Source of the DNA: Guillardia theta CCMP2712
Taxonomy: Eukaryota; Protista; Cryptophyta
Reading direction: 5' to 3'
Assembly: GCF_000315625.1 (NCBI RefSeq)
Contig: NW_005434533.1
Location: forward strand, 93,821 to 157,820
Length of the DNA: 64,000 bases
Under the pieces are notes generated by a model, which saw only the letters and a program-made list of their open reading frames with translations, had not been told where the DNA came from and did no database searches. This document shows, piece by piece, positions 18,076 through 47,390 of the stretch. The position numbers and the translations under genes are program-made. How positions within the stretch are numbered: the stretch's first letter is position 1; each line of letters opens with the position of its first letter.

Positions 18076-19259
18076 GAGGGGCACTGATGGGGGAGGGGTT
18101 CCAGTAAAAGGTTGATAGAGAGTCGTAGAGGGAGGCATTGAGGCAGTCATTTGAGGGGGGATGAGAAATGCTCCCAAGAGGGGTAGGGGTAGTCCTCCTA
18201 ACGTCTCTCTCACCTCCCAAAGAAGGGGAGGGGTGTCATCATGTACCCTCAGTTTGCGCGAAATAATCGTATAAAAAGTTGGGTAGGGTACTGTTTTGTA
18301 TGTCTTGGGGTCCCTGATAAGATAAGGCAAGGGGGTGGGGTGAACCTGGTCTTTGAGGTAGTCATGGGGAGACGTAGGAAAAAGAGTAAAAAGAACCAAA
18401 AAAACTTTTAAAAAAGACACGGCTAGATCGATAGGGGTAGTTTCATGGTGTAGTAAGGGGTACTCTTGAGCCATGGTCGAAAAGGAGTGTTTTAATTGTT
18501 GACCAAAAAAAAAAGGAGTCTTTCGCAATGCCGGCTCTGCTCCAGTTCTTGAAATTTGAATATAAACTTTCAAAATTTCAAGTAAAATTTCTCCATTACT
18601 TATCTTTTTGCTCGGACAGTCACCTACGCCCCGTCGATTGTATCAGTGCGGTAAGGGTCCGGCCCTATACTGCAGGTACCACTGATTTGGGTGGGGGTTG
18701 TTCCTTCCGGTCTATGAGGGGGTAGGGTAGTCTTGCAGTTCCTTGCCAGGGGGGTTCTCCATCAGATCGGGGATCGAACTCGCAAACGGTGGGATCTCCC
18801 GGTAGTAACTGGCAATCCTGGGGTCGTTGTTAGGTTCATTAAGTTCGAGTGGGGGTAGGGTCATTGTGGCAGAGCTCGTGACCAGGGGTGGGTTGGGGTG
18901 GACTTTTGGAGGGCCCCTGACGTCCCAACAGCCTGGAGACAACCAGGGTGTACGGCATGTTGATAGGACCGGTGGTTGGACACGGGTGCTTTAATTATAG
19001 GGGCTGTGACCAAGAACGGGTGGGGTGCCACGGGGGTAGTAACGGATGGGGTAAAAGGTGGGTGGGTAGTGGGGCGAGGGGATGTAGAGGAGACGCTGGC
19101 GCCTTGTTTTTCCAGCCATCTCCCTCCTCTCCCAATCGCTCTTTCCTCGGAAGACCCCCCACGGACCTCTCCCCTCGCAGGTTCCAAGGCTCTCCCTCCT
19201 CCTCCCCTCCCTTGATAGCGAGCTCCAACTCCTTCAACTTGAGTTGTTCAACAGAAAGT

Positions 19260-20903
19260 ATGCGTGTAGCTCTCGCCCTCTTGGCGATCCTGTCCGCCAC
19301 GGTGGATGCAAGGAAATGTGATGTGTGCTGGTTGACATCCCTGCAATGTACCCCGCCCACAGGCACTCCATCCGCTGGAAAGCCAATTGCAACCACGAAC
19401 TGCAACTTCGGATACAGTGATGGGTCCTTCTCAAAAGATGATACCGACAACGGTTTGGAGCCTCTCAGCTACCAGGTCGCAATGTACACCGGCTGCGGCA
19501 AGGGTGCCACCGACCCTGCCTATTGCAATGCGACTTCGAGCGCGATGAAAGCGAAGATGGTCTTTGGAAGTGATGGAAGCAGTCTCAGTTATGCTGCTAC
19601 CATTCCATACATCGACCATAGCAAGGGTGTTCGCCTCTTCTCCCTTGCGGCTGTTGGCAGCGACATTCAGATGGTTGAGCTGAGCTTTCCCAGACCTGAC
19701 TCTAAGACCAACAAGCTCTCTTCATGGAAAGGAAAGGATGTCACTGACTCCAACAAGGTCCTCATACCCTCCACTGAGCCACTTGCTGCCATCCAGGCTG
19801 GAAGCTTGTCCACCTGGTGCACATTCCTCGGAGCAAGCGGAAACTGGTTGATCGAGAGCAGGGTGGAGATTAACATCCAGGCGACTGTGCTCTACCGCTA
19901 TGCTGTTGGTCAGATCCCTAAAATCACTGCCACATATGCCATGCCTGACAAGAAGACCCTCTACGTGGCAAACGACAAGTACTTGTTCATGTTTGTTTCC
20001 GATCATGCCAAGGATCTCACGTCCGGGCATCTCTATGTTGCTAAGATGGGCTCCAAGGACGTGAAGTGGCTCGACATGGGCAAAACCAATGCTACTGCCG
20101 TCAAGGATGAGATGAAGAAGGGCCTGAAATTCGATGACTACAAGTCCTCGGGCAAGATCAAGGCTGGTATGGAGGGAGTTGCTTCCAGGTTGTTCCCCGA
20201 AGATTATGCAAGCATGCTTGGCGCCACCGAAATGAGCGGAATCACTGGTTTGACTTACAACATGGACGACAAGGGCGCCACTGGCAAGGAGGCTGCTCTC
20301 GGTGCATTCTTTGTGTCGTTTGCTGGAAGCATGAAGAGCTCGGCCTTTGGAGGTACTGATCAGACTTGCGGTACCATCTACAAGTTCGACGTTGGATCTC
20401 TCACCACCTGCGATCTCTCTGGAGCCAAGTGCACTTCTGATGAGAAGAAGAAGGCCAAGGCCGTCTGCTCTCTCGGTCTCAAGACCTTCGAGCCGGACTT
20501 TGTCGCTGGTGGCTCTTGCAAGAAGATCCAGGACCCGATCTACATCAACTTCGCCTCCTACCACAACATGCTCTTCGTCGCCGACTCCAAGTCCAAGGTC
20601 TGGGCCGTCGACTTCAGTGGAAACGGCATCTCGCAGGAGCCTGTCCTCATCTTCGAGGCTGTAGGAAACATTGCCGGAATCACCTGGCTCAGCAACCTCG
20701 TTGGAGATGGCCGCTCCTATCTGTCAATCAACGTCGGAGATGCTAAGACCGGAAACAGCTACATTGGCTACCTCGGTCCGTTCACTCTCAAGGGATACAT
20801 GTCTGGATCCTACGACGTGCTTCACAACATCGGCTGCCCCATCCGCGGCAAAGATGACTACTTGTACGAAGCTACCAAGTATGTCGACCCTGTAGTGCAG
20901 TAA
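19260..20903 (+). CDS. Secreted PhoX/DUF839-fold (beta-propeller) protein, intronless, metal ligands degenerate
   Basis: Signal MRVALALLAILSATVDA; AGSLSTWCTFLG, YAMPDKKTLYVAND, LFMFVSDHAKDLTSGHLYVAK, ASRL...YASMLGAT, CGTIYKF, YIGYLGPF match the algal/bacterial PhoX block order. Confidence 0.75.
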   Translation: MRVALALLAILSATVDARKCDVCWLTSLQCTPPTGTPSAGKPIATTNCNFGYSDGSFSKDDTDNGLEPLSYQVAMYTGCGKGATDPAYCNATSSAMKAKMVFGSDGSSLSYAATIPYIDHSKGVRLFSLAAVGSDIQMVELSFPRPDSKTNKLSSWKGKDVTDSNKVLIPSTEPLAAIQAGSLSTWCTFLGASGNWLIESRVEINIQATVLYRYAVGQIPKITATYAMPDKKTLYVANDKYLFMFVSDHAKDLTSGHLYVAKMGSKDVKWLDMGKTNATAVKDEMKKGLKFDDYKSSGKIKAGMEGVASRLFPEDYASMLGATEMSGITGLTYNMDDKGATGKEAALGAFFVSFAGSMKSSAFGGTDQTCGTIYKFDVGSLTTCDLSGAKCTSDEKKKAKAVCSLGLKTFEPDFVAGGSCKKIQDPIYINFASYHNMLFVADSKSKVWAVDFSGNGISQEPVLIFEAVGNIAGITWLSNLVGDGRSYLSINVGDAKTGNSYIGYLGPFTLKGYMSGSYDVLHNIGCPIRGKDDYLYEATKYVDPVVQ

Positions 20904-22163
20904 TGCTGGCAAGTCTTTTGTATGTAATTTTCAAGATCTGTTTGTGAGAGACTTGAAAAATGTTTGTTTGTTGAATATATTTCGTTATTCTCAACTTCTC
21001 CATTCAATCTTCAACCGCGCTCAATATTTGAGTTGCTTTTGCTAGTTTGCCTCACAATCCAAACACGATATCAGCGCACGAATATACAATCATCTCACAT
21101 GATTGAGTGAAGTATGTGCCTTGTCCTCTGGCAGCTTCTCCTTCACTGTCATCTGGGATACCTGCTGCCGATCTCATTCCTCGTTTTCCATCTTTCTTGA
21201 CTCTTTCCCACCATGTGAATGTAGCTTCACACTTGTGTCAATATGTCAGTCACGTGCTGTGCTGATAACTCCCGTCTCCTCCTCGACTACCTCGCGATCG
21301 CCTTACATGACTTGCGAGGAGTAGTTGGAGAGTTGAAGCCGGAGAGATTCAGGACCGGGCAGTGGCATACTTGGTCGTGCTTTCCTACGAGCAATCCTTA
21401 TGAAAGGAAGCATTAAGAAGGAACGGGAAGCAGGGGACAGAGAAAAGGTGGAACAGAGGAGCGAGTAGGAAGAGAATACTCATGGGGGGGGGGCTGCGAG
21501 GAGGGAATGTAGACAGTGGCAGTGTCGAAATCGACAATCCATGGAGACGAGAAGAGCGAGATGCTGATGGCAAGAAGTAGTTGTGATGGGGGAGGTTGAG
21601 CAGAGGTGGTGGAGGAGAGGCAGGGATAAGAGGACAACAAGAGGATGAGGAGGATGAGGTAGCAAGAGGAGACAGAGGACGGGAAGACAGCATCGAAAGG
21701 AAGGGAGGAGGGGATAGCACTTTGACTTGACTTGTTGTTTCTTGTACATCTCCAGTTTCCTACAAAATCATTACCCCTACCCCCTATTTCATGGTCTAAT
21801 CAACGGGTGCTGTTACATCCCACATAAAAGCTCACCGTCCTCCTTTCGCGCCTGTTCCTCATCTGGTTATCTTGCCTCCTGCCTCTGCTTCCTCCCTATC
21901 CTATCCTCTTGCCTGCCTTCCCTTCCGCTCTCAACCCTCCCTCCTCTCCTCTTGTTGCTTCTCCCTTGCTTGCTTCGGTACCCTCTTCCTTTCATCTCCT
22001 TGCTCGCTCGTTCGTTCAAGTCTCGTCTCTCGTCTCCTTGCGGTCTGCCGTTCTCTGTCATCCTCCTCTGGTCTTCTGCTCTCTTCTTCATTCCTCCCTC
22101 TCCTTCATGCACACGAAGCCATGATCGTTCAACGTGTAGTATGCATGGGTTGAATCCAAGGAC

Positions 22164-28151
<5,988 letters not shown>

Positions 28152-44752: not shown

Positions 44753-46296
44753 ACTCCAAATACACCCCACCCATCAAATGACCAATGCCACATGTCATCA
44801 AGGTGGGGTACCTACCACTACCCCTGCTCGGCGAGAATGGGGATACCACCCCTCCTTTGATAGAGCGCCCCTTTTCTTCTGCTCTTGCTTCACCACCATA
44901 TTGACTACCCCTACCCTACCCATTTCTCAAAATACCCCTCAAAAGACAGCCTCAACGAGGGGTAACTGATACACCCTACCCCATTTTTCAGCAAACCATC
45001 AGTTCCTTGTCTTTTGTAACCCATGATCTACCCCTACCCATTGTTTCCAACAAAGAGCAGGTACCCCACCTTTGAATCTCATACCCCTCTTCTTCGTTCA
45101 GGACCCATAAAATTTCATACCAAAGTACCCACTCATGAAGAATATTAGACTACCCTCACCCCCTTGCAAAGAAAATTCGCCTTTTTATACCCACCCTTTC
45201 GGATCATTTCGATTACCCACCCCGCAACCCTGCAAAGTCCCTGCACGCCACCACCCCCCAGTATATTCAACTTTGTTTGTAACCCACCTTGGTCAGACAA
45301 CAAACGGATTCAGTAAAAGGGACGGGTCACTCTCCTGTAAGTCTAGTACCCACCCACCCTCACAAATTCTGCTGTCCTTGCATGGCACGTGTTCCATTCG
45401 TAGTCAGTAGATCGTGAAGATATTTTGTCCTTGTACTTTCATATGATGTCTATCTGAGGCGGATTGGAAAAACTTACCCGTGTAAAGTGCACTGGTCAAA
45501 TGCTATTGGTCAAAATGGTTCAAATCATGGTCAAATTATGATCCGATGGTTTCTTCAGTTCAGTGCCATCTCGGACCAGTCAGGGCCCGGGAAAGCGAAA
45601 TCCGATCGGACTCCGGGTCACGGCCAGGCCCCCGCCGGCGGGCCAACTAAAAAGCCCGCCTCAATGTCGTGAGGGGGCAGAAGATTCAACATAGAAAAAC
45701 ATGCGAGCGGGAAGAGGACAGCAGTTCTAAATGCGCACGAAGAGACGAGGAATGCACTTTGTACAGAAATGAACAAGGATGACAGGAGGAAGATGGAGAG
45801 ATGGAGCAGAGGAAAAGGGAAGGCAAATGATGAGATGCTTTGGAGGGAGAGGAGTTGGCGATAAGCGGAAGACGGGTTGGGATCAGGAAGAATGAAGAGG
45901 AGATAGGTTGTTGTCAAGTTTAGATGGAACGAAAGGTAGGGCAAGCATTAGGAGGAAGATAGCAAAGGGACAGGTAAAGGAAGATGAATAGACAGTCGCA
46001 CAATCATATCAGTGACGGATCGAGGCATCAAAGGGATGACAAGGCGACTAAAGGAGGAAGGGGTATAAGATTCGATAGAGTCTTTCGTGGAGGACAAGTC
46101 TTTCCCACACTCTCACTCCCTTTTTTCTGTTTTCGCTCATTGCTGATATACTCATTTTTACTCAAGGCCTACTTCGAATACATTCATTCGGCGTGTTCCT
46201 CGAGATTCACCATCAAATAGAGCGTAGCAGCAGCTGCTGATCCAAAGGACAGCTTACCCTGTATTGCGGCGAAATCCGGATCTCTCTTTGTTGATC

Positions 46297-47390
46297 ATGG
46301 TCGTTCAACTGTATCACAAGCATCCAAGGCAGCGGAATGCTGCGGCCAAACACGAGGACGGAGTGGATGAAAATGATGACTGGCCCTCATCCTCCTCCTT
46401 TGACGGCGGGCTACAGTCAGCGATGCAGCAGAGACTGGTGGGAGTTTCAAGGCGATGGAAAGTCCGCAATCATGGAGCCTGGGAGCCTTCAACGAACATC
46501 TCGACAGAAACGTTCAATGATGACTACTTCCGCAGAGTGAGGGAGGAGAATCGCCGCACCCTGGACAAGCTCAGGTCCAGTCACGCTCAGCACCTGGAGC
46601 AGGCGCACCAACTTCTACTGCGGGGCGACGCCATGACGACGGAGTTGGACAGGGTGGAGCTGACACTCCGCCTGCTGCCAAAGCTCAGCTTCTCTAATCA
46701 GCACGAGGCTGCTGATGGTCCCTCCATCCGCCCTCACAGCTGGGCCAACAACCGGTGGAGGAGCGAGGATGGGGAAGGACATGTGCATGCGGCAGGCAAT
46801 GGTGGCAAGACCGCCATGCGACATTCAGATGGACTGATGAGCAGCAGAGCGTATGCCGAAGTCTCTGCATCAAGCACGGAGAAGGAGGAAGGGAAGAAAG
46901 ACTACGGCCTCTTCAGCGGAAGGATCGGCGAGGTGAGGAACCGCTCAACCGGGAAGAACGGCGGGACGAACGGCGGGACGAATGTCGCGTGCTCGGGAGG
47001 AGAGAGCTGGAAGGAGCAAGGGACGATGTCGGCAGGTCTGTTGGAGATGAGAAAGCTGGAAGGTGTGACTCTGACATTCATGGCATCGGCAGCTGTTGCT
47101 CCTCGGTCAAGAGACAGGTCAGTAGGTACCCCTAGCCCACACACTTGTGATTCCTTTGCTGTGTCAGGATCGTTGGGCCCGAGGACGTGGTCAAAGACTT
47201 TCACGAGAGGAAGTCCAAGGCCCTTGAGCTGATCTGGAGGCACTCGGGAGAGGAGGGGATGAGGAGGAGGGGCGAGTTTTGGGTGGAAGGGTTGGATAGA
47301 GTCATCGACGAAGTGCAGAGGAGGAGTGAGAATCGCAGGGAAGACAACGACAGGATGAAGCATGCGACGCTCTCCTCCTTTGTAGTCTAG
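46297..47390 (+). CDS. Hypothetical protein (two exons)
   Basis: Long open exon, then intron AG|gtcagt...tcag|G joining in frame to IVGPEDVVKDFHERK...SSFVV*. Confidence 0.55.

What the first reader, a model, noticed from the sequence alone, without database searches (positions are those of the whole stretch)
19260..20903. Secreted PhoX-fold protein that has lost its catalytic metal ligands (candidate repurposed pseudoenzyme)
Seen: a 547-aa intronless ORF in an intron-rich genome, with a signal peptide, a Cys-rich N-terminus and strong codon bias (AAG/AAC/TAC/TTC). Established: PhoX (DUF839) phosphatases are six-bladed propellers whose Fe/Ca cluster is bound by motifs recalled as C-AGS.TPW.T.L..EE, HE, DD, R..E, PDN, ED and a late E. 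Here the scaffold blocks are kept in order, but these positions read QAGSLSTWCTFLGASG, PKITA, ND, SGITG, PIY, AD and GNI. The Cys and most acidic ligands are replaced while the frame stays intact. Inference: an abundant extracellular or surface protein built from a dead phosphatase, possibly a periplast/scale component, adhesin or phosphate/polyanion binder.
Basis: partly seen in the sequence, partly recalled or inferred. Interest (0 to 1): 0.8.

Follow-up and report, generated by a model that had tools for sequence, protein, structure and literature searches.

The report
Cryptophyte PhoX relative without metal site
This Guillardia theta gene encodes a secreted protein with the six-bladed fold of the iron-calcium phosphatase PhoX, but it has lost almost every residue that holds the metals; it belongs to a small family known so far only from cryptophyte algae, and the same genome keeps an intact PhoX-type gene elsewhere.

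Summary
Window 19260-20903 (+) is an intronless, transcribed 547-aa ORF of Guillardia theta with a signal peptide and 13 cysteines. Pfam does not recognise it. A profile built from it and its relatives hits Pseudomonas fluorescens PhoX at E 1.7e-24. An AlphaFold model (pLDDT 87.5) has PhoX as best structural match (Z 21.4, 378 residues aligned).

Forty-one close PhoX relatives each keep 15-20 of 21 motif residues; the query keeps 3. The positions of C179, E193, E194, E273, R385, E387, D479, D494 and E532 read Q, S, G, T, G, T, I, S and N.

The loss is not private to this gene. Eleven such proteins form one clade (support 98-99). All named members are cryptophytes (Guillardia, Hanusia, Baffinella, Proteomonas).

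The clade also gained features: an invariant Arg beside the one retained Glu, a Tyr-His-Asn motif, and a conserved C-terminal extension whose Cys co-varies with a new Cys in the old active-site loop.

G. theta also has an intron-bearing PhoX-type gene in which most of the conserved motifs were found. Best reading: a secreted, repurposed non-phosphatase propeller whose role is unknown.

The parts
19260..20903 (+). Intronless CDS of 547 aa plus stop (P0001): PhoX-derived six-bladed propeller
19131..21231 (+). Stretch covered colinearly by cDNA-like contigs (5' ends 19131-19157). The 5' UTR is about 105-130 nt. The 3' limit is uncertain because the contig runs into a minus-strand spliced transcript.
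   Evidence: table 8
19260..19310 (+). Signal-peptide-like N-terminus (aa 1-17, hydrophobic core, ends VDA). Equivalent segments are present in the other full-length clade members.
   Evidence: read from the sequence, no predictor was run
19317..19529 (+). Cys-rich N-terminal part (C20, C23, C30, C48, C79, C89). These Cys are invariant in the Guillardia/Hanusia subclade.
19794..19841 (+). Former cofactor motif 1 (aa 179-194). The PhoX C179/E193/E194 positions read Q179/S193/G194. It contains the clade-specific C187. The 24-45-residue loop that follows in canonical proteins is deleted.
19854..19862 (+). E199 (= PhoX E251), invariant in all 58 aligned proteins, plus R201, which is invariant only in the ligand-less clade
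19920..19976 (+). The PhoX H272/E273 positions read K221/T223. The D291/D292 positions read N238/D239, so D239 is kept.
20238..20246 (+). The PhoX R385/E387 positions read G327/T329
20538..20588 (+). The PhoX D479/N480 positions read I427/Y428. The clade-specific Y434-H435-N436 motif lies here. The canonical E-D pair (PhoX T493/D494) reads D442/S443.
20667..20669 (+). The PhoX E532 position reads N470
20787..20900 (+). C-terminal extension (aa 510-547), absent from canonical PhoX proteins. D519, L521, N523, G525 and P527 are invariant in the clade. C526 co-varies with C187. AF2 confidence is low (pLDDT 53-66).

Best explanation
What it is: the gene encodes a secretory-pathway, disulfide-rich protein. 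It descends from a PhoX-type Fe/Ca alkaline phosphatase, keeps that enzyme's six-bladed propeller, and can no longer build the PhoX metal cluster. It is therefore not a PhoX-type phosphatase.

Where it belongs: it is one member of a family of such proteins. G. theta has three intronless copies on one contig, and all named members are cryptophytes. In this family the old pocket was dismantled and partly rebuilt.

What is shown: homology, fold, loss of the conserved cofactor positions, monophyly of the ligand-less clade, transcription, and most of the conserved motifs in a separate G. theta PhoX-type gene.

What is inferred:
- The protein leaves the cytosol through the ER.
- The invariant R201 compensates the charge of the retained E199.
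- A C187-C526 disulfide pins the new C-terminal extension onto the former active-site loop.
- The protein now works as a binding or structural module (protein, glycan or polyanion) outside the cell or in the endomembrane lumen, rather than as a catalyst.
For: Homology:
- Exhaustive phmmer finds 108 relatives. Those with E 1e-13 to 1e-6 that were scanned carry PF05787 PhoX.
- A profile of the query plus 57 relatives hits 3ZWU/4AMF at E 1.7e-24.
- The ESM Atlas neighbours, by features and by structure, are all PF05787 clusters.

Fold:
- The AF2 model has pLDDT 87.5 and pTM 0.90.
- Foldseek's top hits are 4a9v and 3zwu. VIA-align gives Z 21.4 over 378 residues.

Loss of cofactor positions:
- The query keeps 3 of 21 residues; each of 41 canonical relatives keeps 15-20 of them (40 of 41 at least 16).
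- R385 and D292 are named as PhoX active-site residues in PMC11098088.

Clade and constraint:
- The 11 ligand-less proteins are one side of a branch with support 99 and 98. The named ones come from Guillardia, Hanusia, Baffinella and Proteomonas.
- There are 20 invariant columns across the clade.
- dN/dS is 0.27-0.43 among the G. theta copies.

Gained features: R201, YHN 434-436 and the C-terminal extension. C187 and C526 are both present in 9 members and both absent in 2.

Intact counterpart: exons at G000:C44:240781-243358 carry the CAG, GSEE, GHE, DD, RLETR, KWEG, GED and QHP motifs.

Expression: contigs of several studies hold the whole ORF. The same runs show spliced joints elsewhere, so they derive from RNA.
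Against: - No activity or localisation data exist.
- The identity of the PhoX metal ligands (C179, E193/194, E251, E273, D292, E387, D479, D494, E532) is recalled from Yong et al. 2014. That paper was not held. Only R385 and D292 are confirmed from a paper read here.
- Invariant polar residues (E199, R201, D230, H435, N436, D519, N523) could form a new catalytic site rather than a binding site.
- The C187-C526 pairing rests on one co-loss event, in the sister proteins P0007 and P0008. The AF2 tail has low confidence, and the docking test gave no answer.
- The signal peptide was judged by eye only.
- dN/dS of 0.3-0.4 is only moderate constraint, and gene conversion blurs the P0003/P0004 value.
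Confidence: 0.6

Rival explanations
1. It is a retooled enzyme. The family lost the PhoX Fe/Ca cluster but built a new catalytic site from clade-invariant residues (E199, R201, H435, N436, D519, N523, possibly with one Ca2+ held by E199 and D/E442). It would hydrolyse or modify another substrate in the secretory pathway or outside the cell.
For: - Eight polar positions are invariant in the clade, and several are absent from canonical PhoX.
- E199 is invariant in all 58 proteins, and position 442 is acidic in 9 of 11 clade members.
- Six-bladed propellers host many different hydrolase chemistries; lactonases, phytase and SMP30 are among the structural matches.
- The family has persisted in several genera.
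Against: - Most former ligand columns vary within the clade: position 179 reads Q/S/A/V/M/G, and 194 reads G/K/Q/A/S. This looks like relaxation, not a redesigned site.
- The query itself lost E193 and R218, which most clade members keep.
- H435/N436 lie in a hairpin turn that, by propeller topology, probably faces away from the old pocket. This is an inference.
- No match to any other enzyme family was found.
Confidence: 0.25
2. It is a functionless relic: a duplicated PhoX gene drifting towards pseudogene status that still happens to be open and transcribed.
For: - The catalytic residues are lost.
- Identity to the Hanusia counterpart is only 63%.
- dN/dS is moderate rather than low.
Against: - The 547 codons have no stop.
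- Ligand-less relatives occur in at least four genera, with 20 invariant columns and a conserved gained C-terminal extension.
- dN/dS is well below 1.
- Transcripts appear in several independent studies.
- AF2 folds it confidently.
Confidence: 0.05
3. It is still a PhoX-type phosphatase, and the sequence alignment hides its ligands. Shifted or non-homologous residues would take over metal binding, as proposed for the unrelated-looking Psip1.
For: - Psip1 shows that PhoX-like Fe/Ca sites can exist at very low sequence identity (PMC11098088).
- A few acidic residues lie near lost positions (E324, D425, D442, E466).
Against: - Those nearby acidic residues are not conserved, even in the Hanusia counterpart or the G. 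theta paralogues.
- The alignment blocks around each ligand are anchored by shared invariant residues (W186, E199, G217, D230, T233, G321-A322, P426, W448).
- There is no Cys at or near position 179.
- The loop after motif 1 is deleted.
Confidence: 0.07

Closest known systems
Pseudomonas fluorescens PhoX (PDB 3ZWU, 4A9V, 4ALF, 4AMF), the Fe/Ca alkaline phosphatase of Pfam PF05787
   Same: The six-bladed propeller plus its extra elements: Z 21.4, 378 residues aligned over model 26-512 and chain 9-588. Blocks are shared in the same order: TPW, GW..E..GR.., the MPD/T strand, DL..G.LY.A, GAT and W-anchored strands. Both are secreted.
   Different: Only about 15% identity. The positions of C179, E193, E194, H272, E273, D291, R385, E387, D479, D494, E532, Q550 and H551 are all replaced; E251 and D292 are kept. 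It has a eukaryotic Sec-type signal instead of a Tat signal, a Cys-rich N-terminus, and an added C-terminal extension.
The PhoX subfamily that includes green-algal PHOX-type proteins (Bryopsis, Volvox africanus, Coccomyxa, Ulva), Campylobacter PhoX and alphaproteobacterial PhoX
   Same: These are the nearest canonical relatives by sequence (E 1e-13 to 1e-6). They share subfamily blocks that PfPhoX lacks: ASRL....YA..GAT, MPD.(K/R)T and a GY.GPF end. G. theta has its own gene of this type on contig C44. A tree that groups the ligand-less clade with the green-algal proteins is not rejected (p-AU 0.99).
   Different: Each canonical member keeps 15-20 of the 21 motif residues; the query keeps 3. 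The canonical G. theta gene has introns and the query has none. Canonical proteins end at GPF and lack the extension.
Degenerate bacterial PF05787 members, for example the Caenispirillum salinarum protein annotated 'alkaline phosphatase PhoX' (P0020)
   Same: They are PhoX-family proteins with an incomplete ligand set, keeping 6-12 of 21 residues. Loss of the site has therefore happened more than once in the family.
   Different: They do not group with the cryptophyte-type clade. They lack its C-terminal extension, R201 and the YHN motif, and they retain more of the motif residues.
Psip1 of marine picocyanobacteria (PMC11098088)
   Same: A secreted six-bladed propeller compared with PhoX at very low sequence identity.
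   Different: It is the opposite case. Psip1 keeps the PhoX metal-binding residues in space and is an Fe/Ca-dependent phosphatase. The query keeps the sequence scaffold and loses those residues.

Membership tests
Pfam PF05787 PhoX (DUF839) | Match to the family HMM above the gathering score (24 bits) | tested here: not met
   hmmscan of the query at E up to 10 returns no family. A six-frame PF05787 search of the genome also finds nothing at this locus.
Pfam PF05787 PhoX (DUF839) | Homology to members, shown transitively or by profile | tested here: met
   phmmer hits P0012, P0018, P0026, P0028 and P0051 at E 1e-13 to 3e-6, and all carry PF05787 at 70-110 bits. Profile A2 against 3ZWU gives E 1.7e-24.
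Pfam PF05787 PhoX (DUF839) | PhoX-type six-bladed beta-propeller fold | tested here: met
   Foldseek ranks 1-2 are 4a9v and 3zwu. VIA-align gives Z 21.4, rmsd 3.4 A and 378 aligned residues. The Atlas structural neighbours are all PF05787.
PhoX Fe/Ca alkaline phosphatase (functional enzyme) | Cys ligand to iron (PfPhoX C179; role recalled from Yong et al. 2014) | tested here: not met
   The column is C in 39 of 46 non-clade relatives and Q179 in the query. No clade member has C there.
PhoX Fe/Ca alkaline phosphatase (functional enzyme) | Acidic ligand set (PfPhoX E193, E194, E251, E273, D292, E387, D479, D494, E532) | tested here: not met
   Only E199 (=E251) and D239 (=D292) remain. The others read S, G, T, T, I, S and N.
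PhoX Fe/Ca alkaline phosphatase (functional enzyme) | Basic phosphate-contacting residue (PfPhoX R385; K in the nearest subfamily) | tested here: not met
   It is G327 in the query. R385 is named as an active-site residue in PMC11098088.
PhoX Fe/Ca alkaline phosphatase (functional enzyme) | Fe3+/Ca2+-dependent phosphomonoesterase activity | not testable with these tools
   Needs recombinant protein and an assay.
Cryptophyte-type ligand-less PhoX-like clade (defined here) | Membership of the clade; R201, Y434-H435-N436 and the C-terminal extension with D519, L521, N523, G525, P527 | tested here: met
   The clade has support 99 and 98, and all listed residues are present in the query.

The most novel reading that the evidence does not exclude
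Cryptophytes turned a horizontally acquired PhoX phosphatase into a new lineage-specific family of secreted proteins. The five-metal pocket was emptied. A newly added, disulfide-pinned C-terminal segment and an invariant Arg then rebuilt the pocket into a different ligand-binding (or catalytic) site. The family may serve the cryptophyte cell surface or extrusive apparatus while the intact PhoX-type gene keeps the phosphatase role.
Probability: 0.3. Interest if true: 0.6.

Novelty: new variant of a known kind. Interest (0 to 1): 0.45.

Why it matters
PhoX is used as a marker of microbial phosphorus scavenging, and homology-based surveys count PF05787-like genes as phosphatases. This case shows a eukaryotic clade that keeps the fold but not the cofactor site. 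Some bacterial proteins annotated as PhoX also lack much of it. Such counts therefore need a check of the ligand positions.

For cryptophyte biology it gives a defined, lineage-restricted family of secreted proteins, with an intact parent-type gene in the same genome. That is a clean system for studying how a complex metalloenzyme pocket is dismantled and reused. The protein is also a candidate for the poorly known extracellular or periplast proteome.

Tried and rejected
- Pfam scan and PDB sequence search with the single protein, and a PDB profile search with the five close homologues: no hits. The link to PhoX only appears with the exhaustive search and the 58-sequence profile.
- PF05787 search of the own genome found nothing, and also missed the intron-split canonical gene.
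- Word-indexed homologue search with the 58-sequence profile added almost nothing.
- The original PhoX structure paper could not be read. Three other papers and one supplement did not list the ligands. A PhoX plus Cys179 search returned only NADPH-oxidase papers.
- Literature searches for the paralogue locus tags, and for a cryptophyte periplast proteome, found nothing relevant.
- Complex prediction of propeller (aa 20-509) against the C-terminal extension (aa 510-547): no verdict, score 0.03. This counts neither for nor against.
- Raw RNA-seq run X22 gave only 26 reads on the 5.9-kb stretch, too few to define transcript ends or level.
- Contig depths were not used to rank expression, as the tool warns against that.
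- Codon bias as a sign of high expression was rejected.
- A bipartite plastid or periplastid targeting signal was considered and rejected. The folded Cys-rich domain starts directly after the signal peptide, with no transit-peptide-like stretch.
- The exons of the canonical C44 gene were searched and read one by one only. They were not joined, so that gene is not in the trees.
- Earlier scan notes near this place concern other features and did not bear on this finding.

Full report
Source and gene. The window is contig C141:93821-157820 of Guillardia theta CCMP2712. Positions 19260-20903 on the + strand are one open frame of 547 codons plus a stop. The product starts with a hydrophobic signal-like segment (aa 1-17, ending VDA) followed directly by RKC. 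It has 13 cysteines, six of them between residues 20 and 89, and two N-x-S/T sites.

Transcription. Contigs from transcriptome-sized assemblies of several studies contain the whole ORF colinearly, starting at 19131-19157. The same runs show spliced joints, for example a 55-nt GT..AG intron at 22315-22369 in the next + strand gene. They therefore derive from RNA, and the contrast between an intronless gene and an intron-bearing neighbour is real.

Codon bias. It says nothing about abundance.

Is it a PhoX relative? On its own the protein matches no Pfam family and no solved structure by sequence. An exhaustive phmmer search of 1.84 billion representatives gave 108 hits. The more distant hits that were scanned (P0012, P0018, P0026, P0028, P0051) carry PF05787 PhoX at 70-110 bits. 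A profile of the query and 57 of these relatives (alignment A2) hits Pseudomonas fluorescens PhoX (3ZWU, 4AMF) at E 1.7e-24.

Fold. An AlphaFold2 model built on A2 has mean pLDDT 87.5 and pTM 0.90. Foldseek ranks 4a9v and 3zwu first (E 7.7e-11, TM 0.55/0.52), ahead of generic WD40 propellers. VIA-align gives Z 21.4, rmsd 3.4 A and 378 aligned residues for 3zwu. Other six-bladed propellers align over about 240-300 residues. The ESM Atlas neighbours, by features and by structure, are all PF05787 clusters. The homology and the fold are therefore established, although the protein fails the Pfam threshold.

Are the cofactor positions lost? The HMMER alignment of the A2 profile to 3ZWU uses the chain numbering in which the motif Cys is residue 179. 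Combining it with the A2 columns gives this map from PfPhoX to the query:
- C179 to Q179
- E193 to S193
- E194 to G194
- E251 to E199 (kept)
- H272 to K221
- E273 to T223
- D291 to N238
- D292 to D239 (kept)
- R385 to G327
- E387 to T329
- D479 to I427
- N/G480 to Y428
- D494 to S443
- E532 to N470
- Q550/H551 to G493/D494

Subfamily motifs are also gone: RLETRR reads RLFPED. Of 21 motif residues, each of the 41 canonical relatives keeps 15-20 (40 of 41 at least 16) and the query keeps 3 (the E532 column in that table is one residue off, so nearly all canonical rows are undercounted by one; it is corrected here). The loop of 24-45 residues that follows the first motif in canonical proteins is deleted.

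Status of the ligand assignments. That these positions are the Fe/Ca ligands is my recollection of Yong et al. 2014, which the library does not hold. PMC11098088 confirms R385 and D292 as active-site residues and the Fe/Ca requirement. The conservation argument does not depend on memory.

Could shifted residues rescue the site? Acidic residues near lost positions (E324, D425, E466) are not conserved even in the closest relatives.

A clade, not a single gene. The nearest relatives are these:
- a Hanusia phi protein at 63% identity;
- two G. theta paralogues (GUITHDRAFT_119177 and 119176, 42% identity), head to head at C141:41862-43850 (-) and 44834-46801 (+), about 67 kb upstream and outside the window;
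- a second Hanusia protein;
- proteins from Baffinella frigidus (CCMP2293), from Proteomonas sulcata and from unnamed metagenome or transcriptome sources.

In two maximum-likelihood trees these 11 proteins form one side of a branch, with SH-aLRT 99 and 98. All 11 keep only 1-6 of the 21 motif residues. The loss therefore predates the split of several cryptophyte genera, and the family has persisted and duplicated since.

Constraint. Twenty columns are invariant across the clade. Nei-Gojobori dN/dS is 0.27-0.30 between the query and its paralogues (dS 1.5-1.7, near saturation). It is 0.43 between the two paralogues. That last value is blurred by gene conversion: nucleotide identity between the two runs from 54-58% in the first 450 nt to 97-100% at nt 1201-1650.

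What the clade gained. Comparing clade and canonical columns shows four clade-specific features:
- R201, two residues after the retained E199 and so probably on the same side of the strand. It is invariant in the clade and variable in canonical proteins.
- Y434-H435-N436 and F439.
- A two-residue V-G insertion at 481-482.
- A C-terminal extension beyond the GPF end of canonical proteins, with G512, Y513, S517, D519, L521, N523, G525, C526 and P527 conserved.

A possible disulfide. C187 lies in the TPW loop of the old first motif, where canonical proteins have G or N. C526 lies in the extension. Both are Cys in nine clade members and both are absent in the sister proteins P0007 and P0008. This fits a disulfide that pins the extension to the former active-site loop. 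It rests on a single co-loss event. The AF2 tail is of low confidence (pLDDT 53-66). A docking test of the tail against the propeller gave no verdict. I therefore treat the disulfide, and the idea that R201 neutralises E199 in place of a metal, as inferences.

The intact counterpart. Searching the genome with the A2 profile found a fourth, intron-split gene at C44:240781-243358 (+). Its exon translations carry most of the canonical motifs: NPCAGS, GSEEYEPD, PWEV, GRRGHE, ITDDG, ASRLETR, EKWEG, IGEDTS and VVQHP. NPDN was not found and may be split by an intron. This gene is therefore not in the trees.

Origin of the clade. The gene's closest listed relatives are green-algal PHOX-type proteins (Bryopsis, Ostreobium, Acetabularia, Coccomyxa, Ulva, Volvox), which sit among alphaproteobacterial and Campylobacter PhoX proteins. 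A published PHOX tree also reports cryptophyte members and a bacterial origin (PMC10735309). A tree constrained to join the ligand-less clade with the green-algal group is not rejected. It gives p-AU 0.99 and scored 94 log-likelihood units better than the quick free search. An origin by duplication within the algal PHOX lineage is therefore compatible but not shown.

Interpretation. The best-supported reading is a secretory-pathway protein that kept the PhoX scaffold, cannot assemble the PhoX Fe/Ca cluster, and has been retained under selection with a remodelled pocket region. The genome's phosphatase need is presumably met by the C44 gene.

What it now binds or does is unknown. I favour a non-catalytic binding or structural role (0.6) over a new catalytic activity (0.25), for two reasons. 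First, most former ligand columns vary freely within the clade. Second, the query has lost even residues that most clade members keep (E193, R218).

A neutral relic is unlikely (0.05), and hidden PhoX activity is unlikely (0.07).

Novelty and score. Catalytically degenerate members are common in enzyme families, and degenerate PF05787 proteins also occur in bacteria. One example is a Caenispirillum protein annotated as PhoX that keeps 12 of 21 residues. What is new here has three parts:
- a coherent eukaryotic clade, known so far only from cryptophytes;
- gained conserved features in that clade;
- an intact parent-type gene alongside it in the same genome.

I rate this a new variant of a known kind, with moderate interest (0.45).

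Noticed in passing
window 21232-21290: cDNA-like contigs of two runs that carry this gene skip 59 nt in its downstream region. The skipped piece reads CT..AC on the + strand, which is a canonical GT..AG intron on the minus strand. A spliced minus-strand transcript therefore overlaps the gene's 3' region and was merged with it by the assembler. No convincing minus-strand ORF was seen at 20950-21450.
   Followed up: partly
G000:C44:240781-243358 (+) (loci L013, L014): An intron-split G. theta gene of the canonical PhoX type carries most of the conserved cofactor motifs. The PF05787 six-frame search of the genome missed it; it was found only with the 58-sequence profile.
   Followed up: partly
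G000:C141:41862-43850 (-) and 44834-46801 (+) (loci L010, L011): The two head-to-head paralogues (GUITHDRAFT_119176 and 119177) are mosaics. Nucleotide identity is 54-58% over the first 450 nt and 97-100% over nt 1201-1650 of the CDS, which suggests gene conversion between the inverted copies.
   Followed up: partly
proteins P0020, P0066, P0080, P0082, P0104, P0109 (not in the window): Several PF05787-like proteins outside the cryptophyte clade also lack many cofactor residues, keeping 6-12 of 21. One from Caenispirillum salinarum is annotated 'alkaline phosphatase PhoX'. Such annotations may overcount functional PhoX.
   Followed up: no
window 19120-19235: The 5' UTR and upstream region of the gene is a C/T-rich tract with runs of CTCC and CCTC. 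Transcript contigs begin inside it, at 19131-19157.
   Followed up: no
window 22273-25221 (+): The neighbouring long ORF has DEAD/DEAH-helicase-like motifs (a VLDEAH stretch) and a confirmed 55-nt GT..AG intron at 22315-22369. Its C-terminal part is low-complexity and rich in Gly, Glu and Arg.
   Followed up: no
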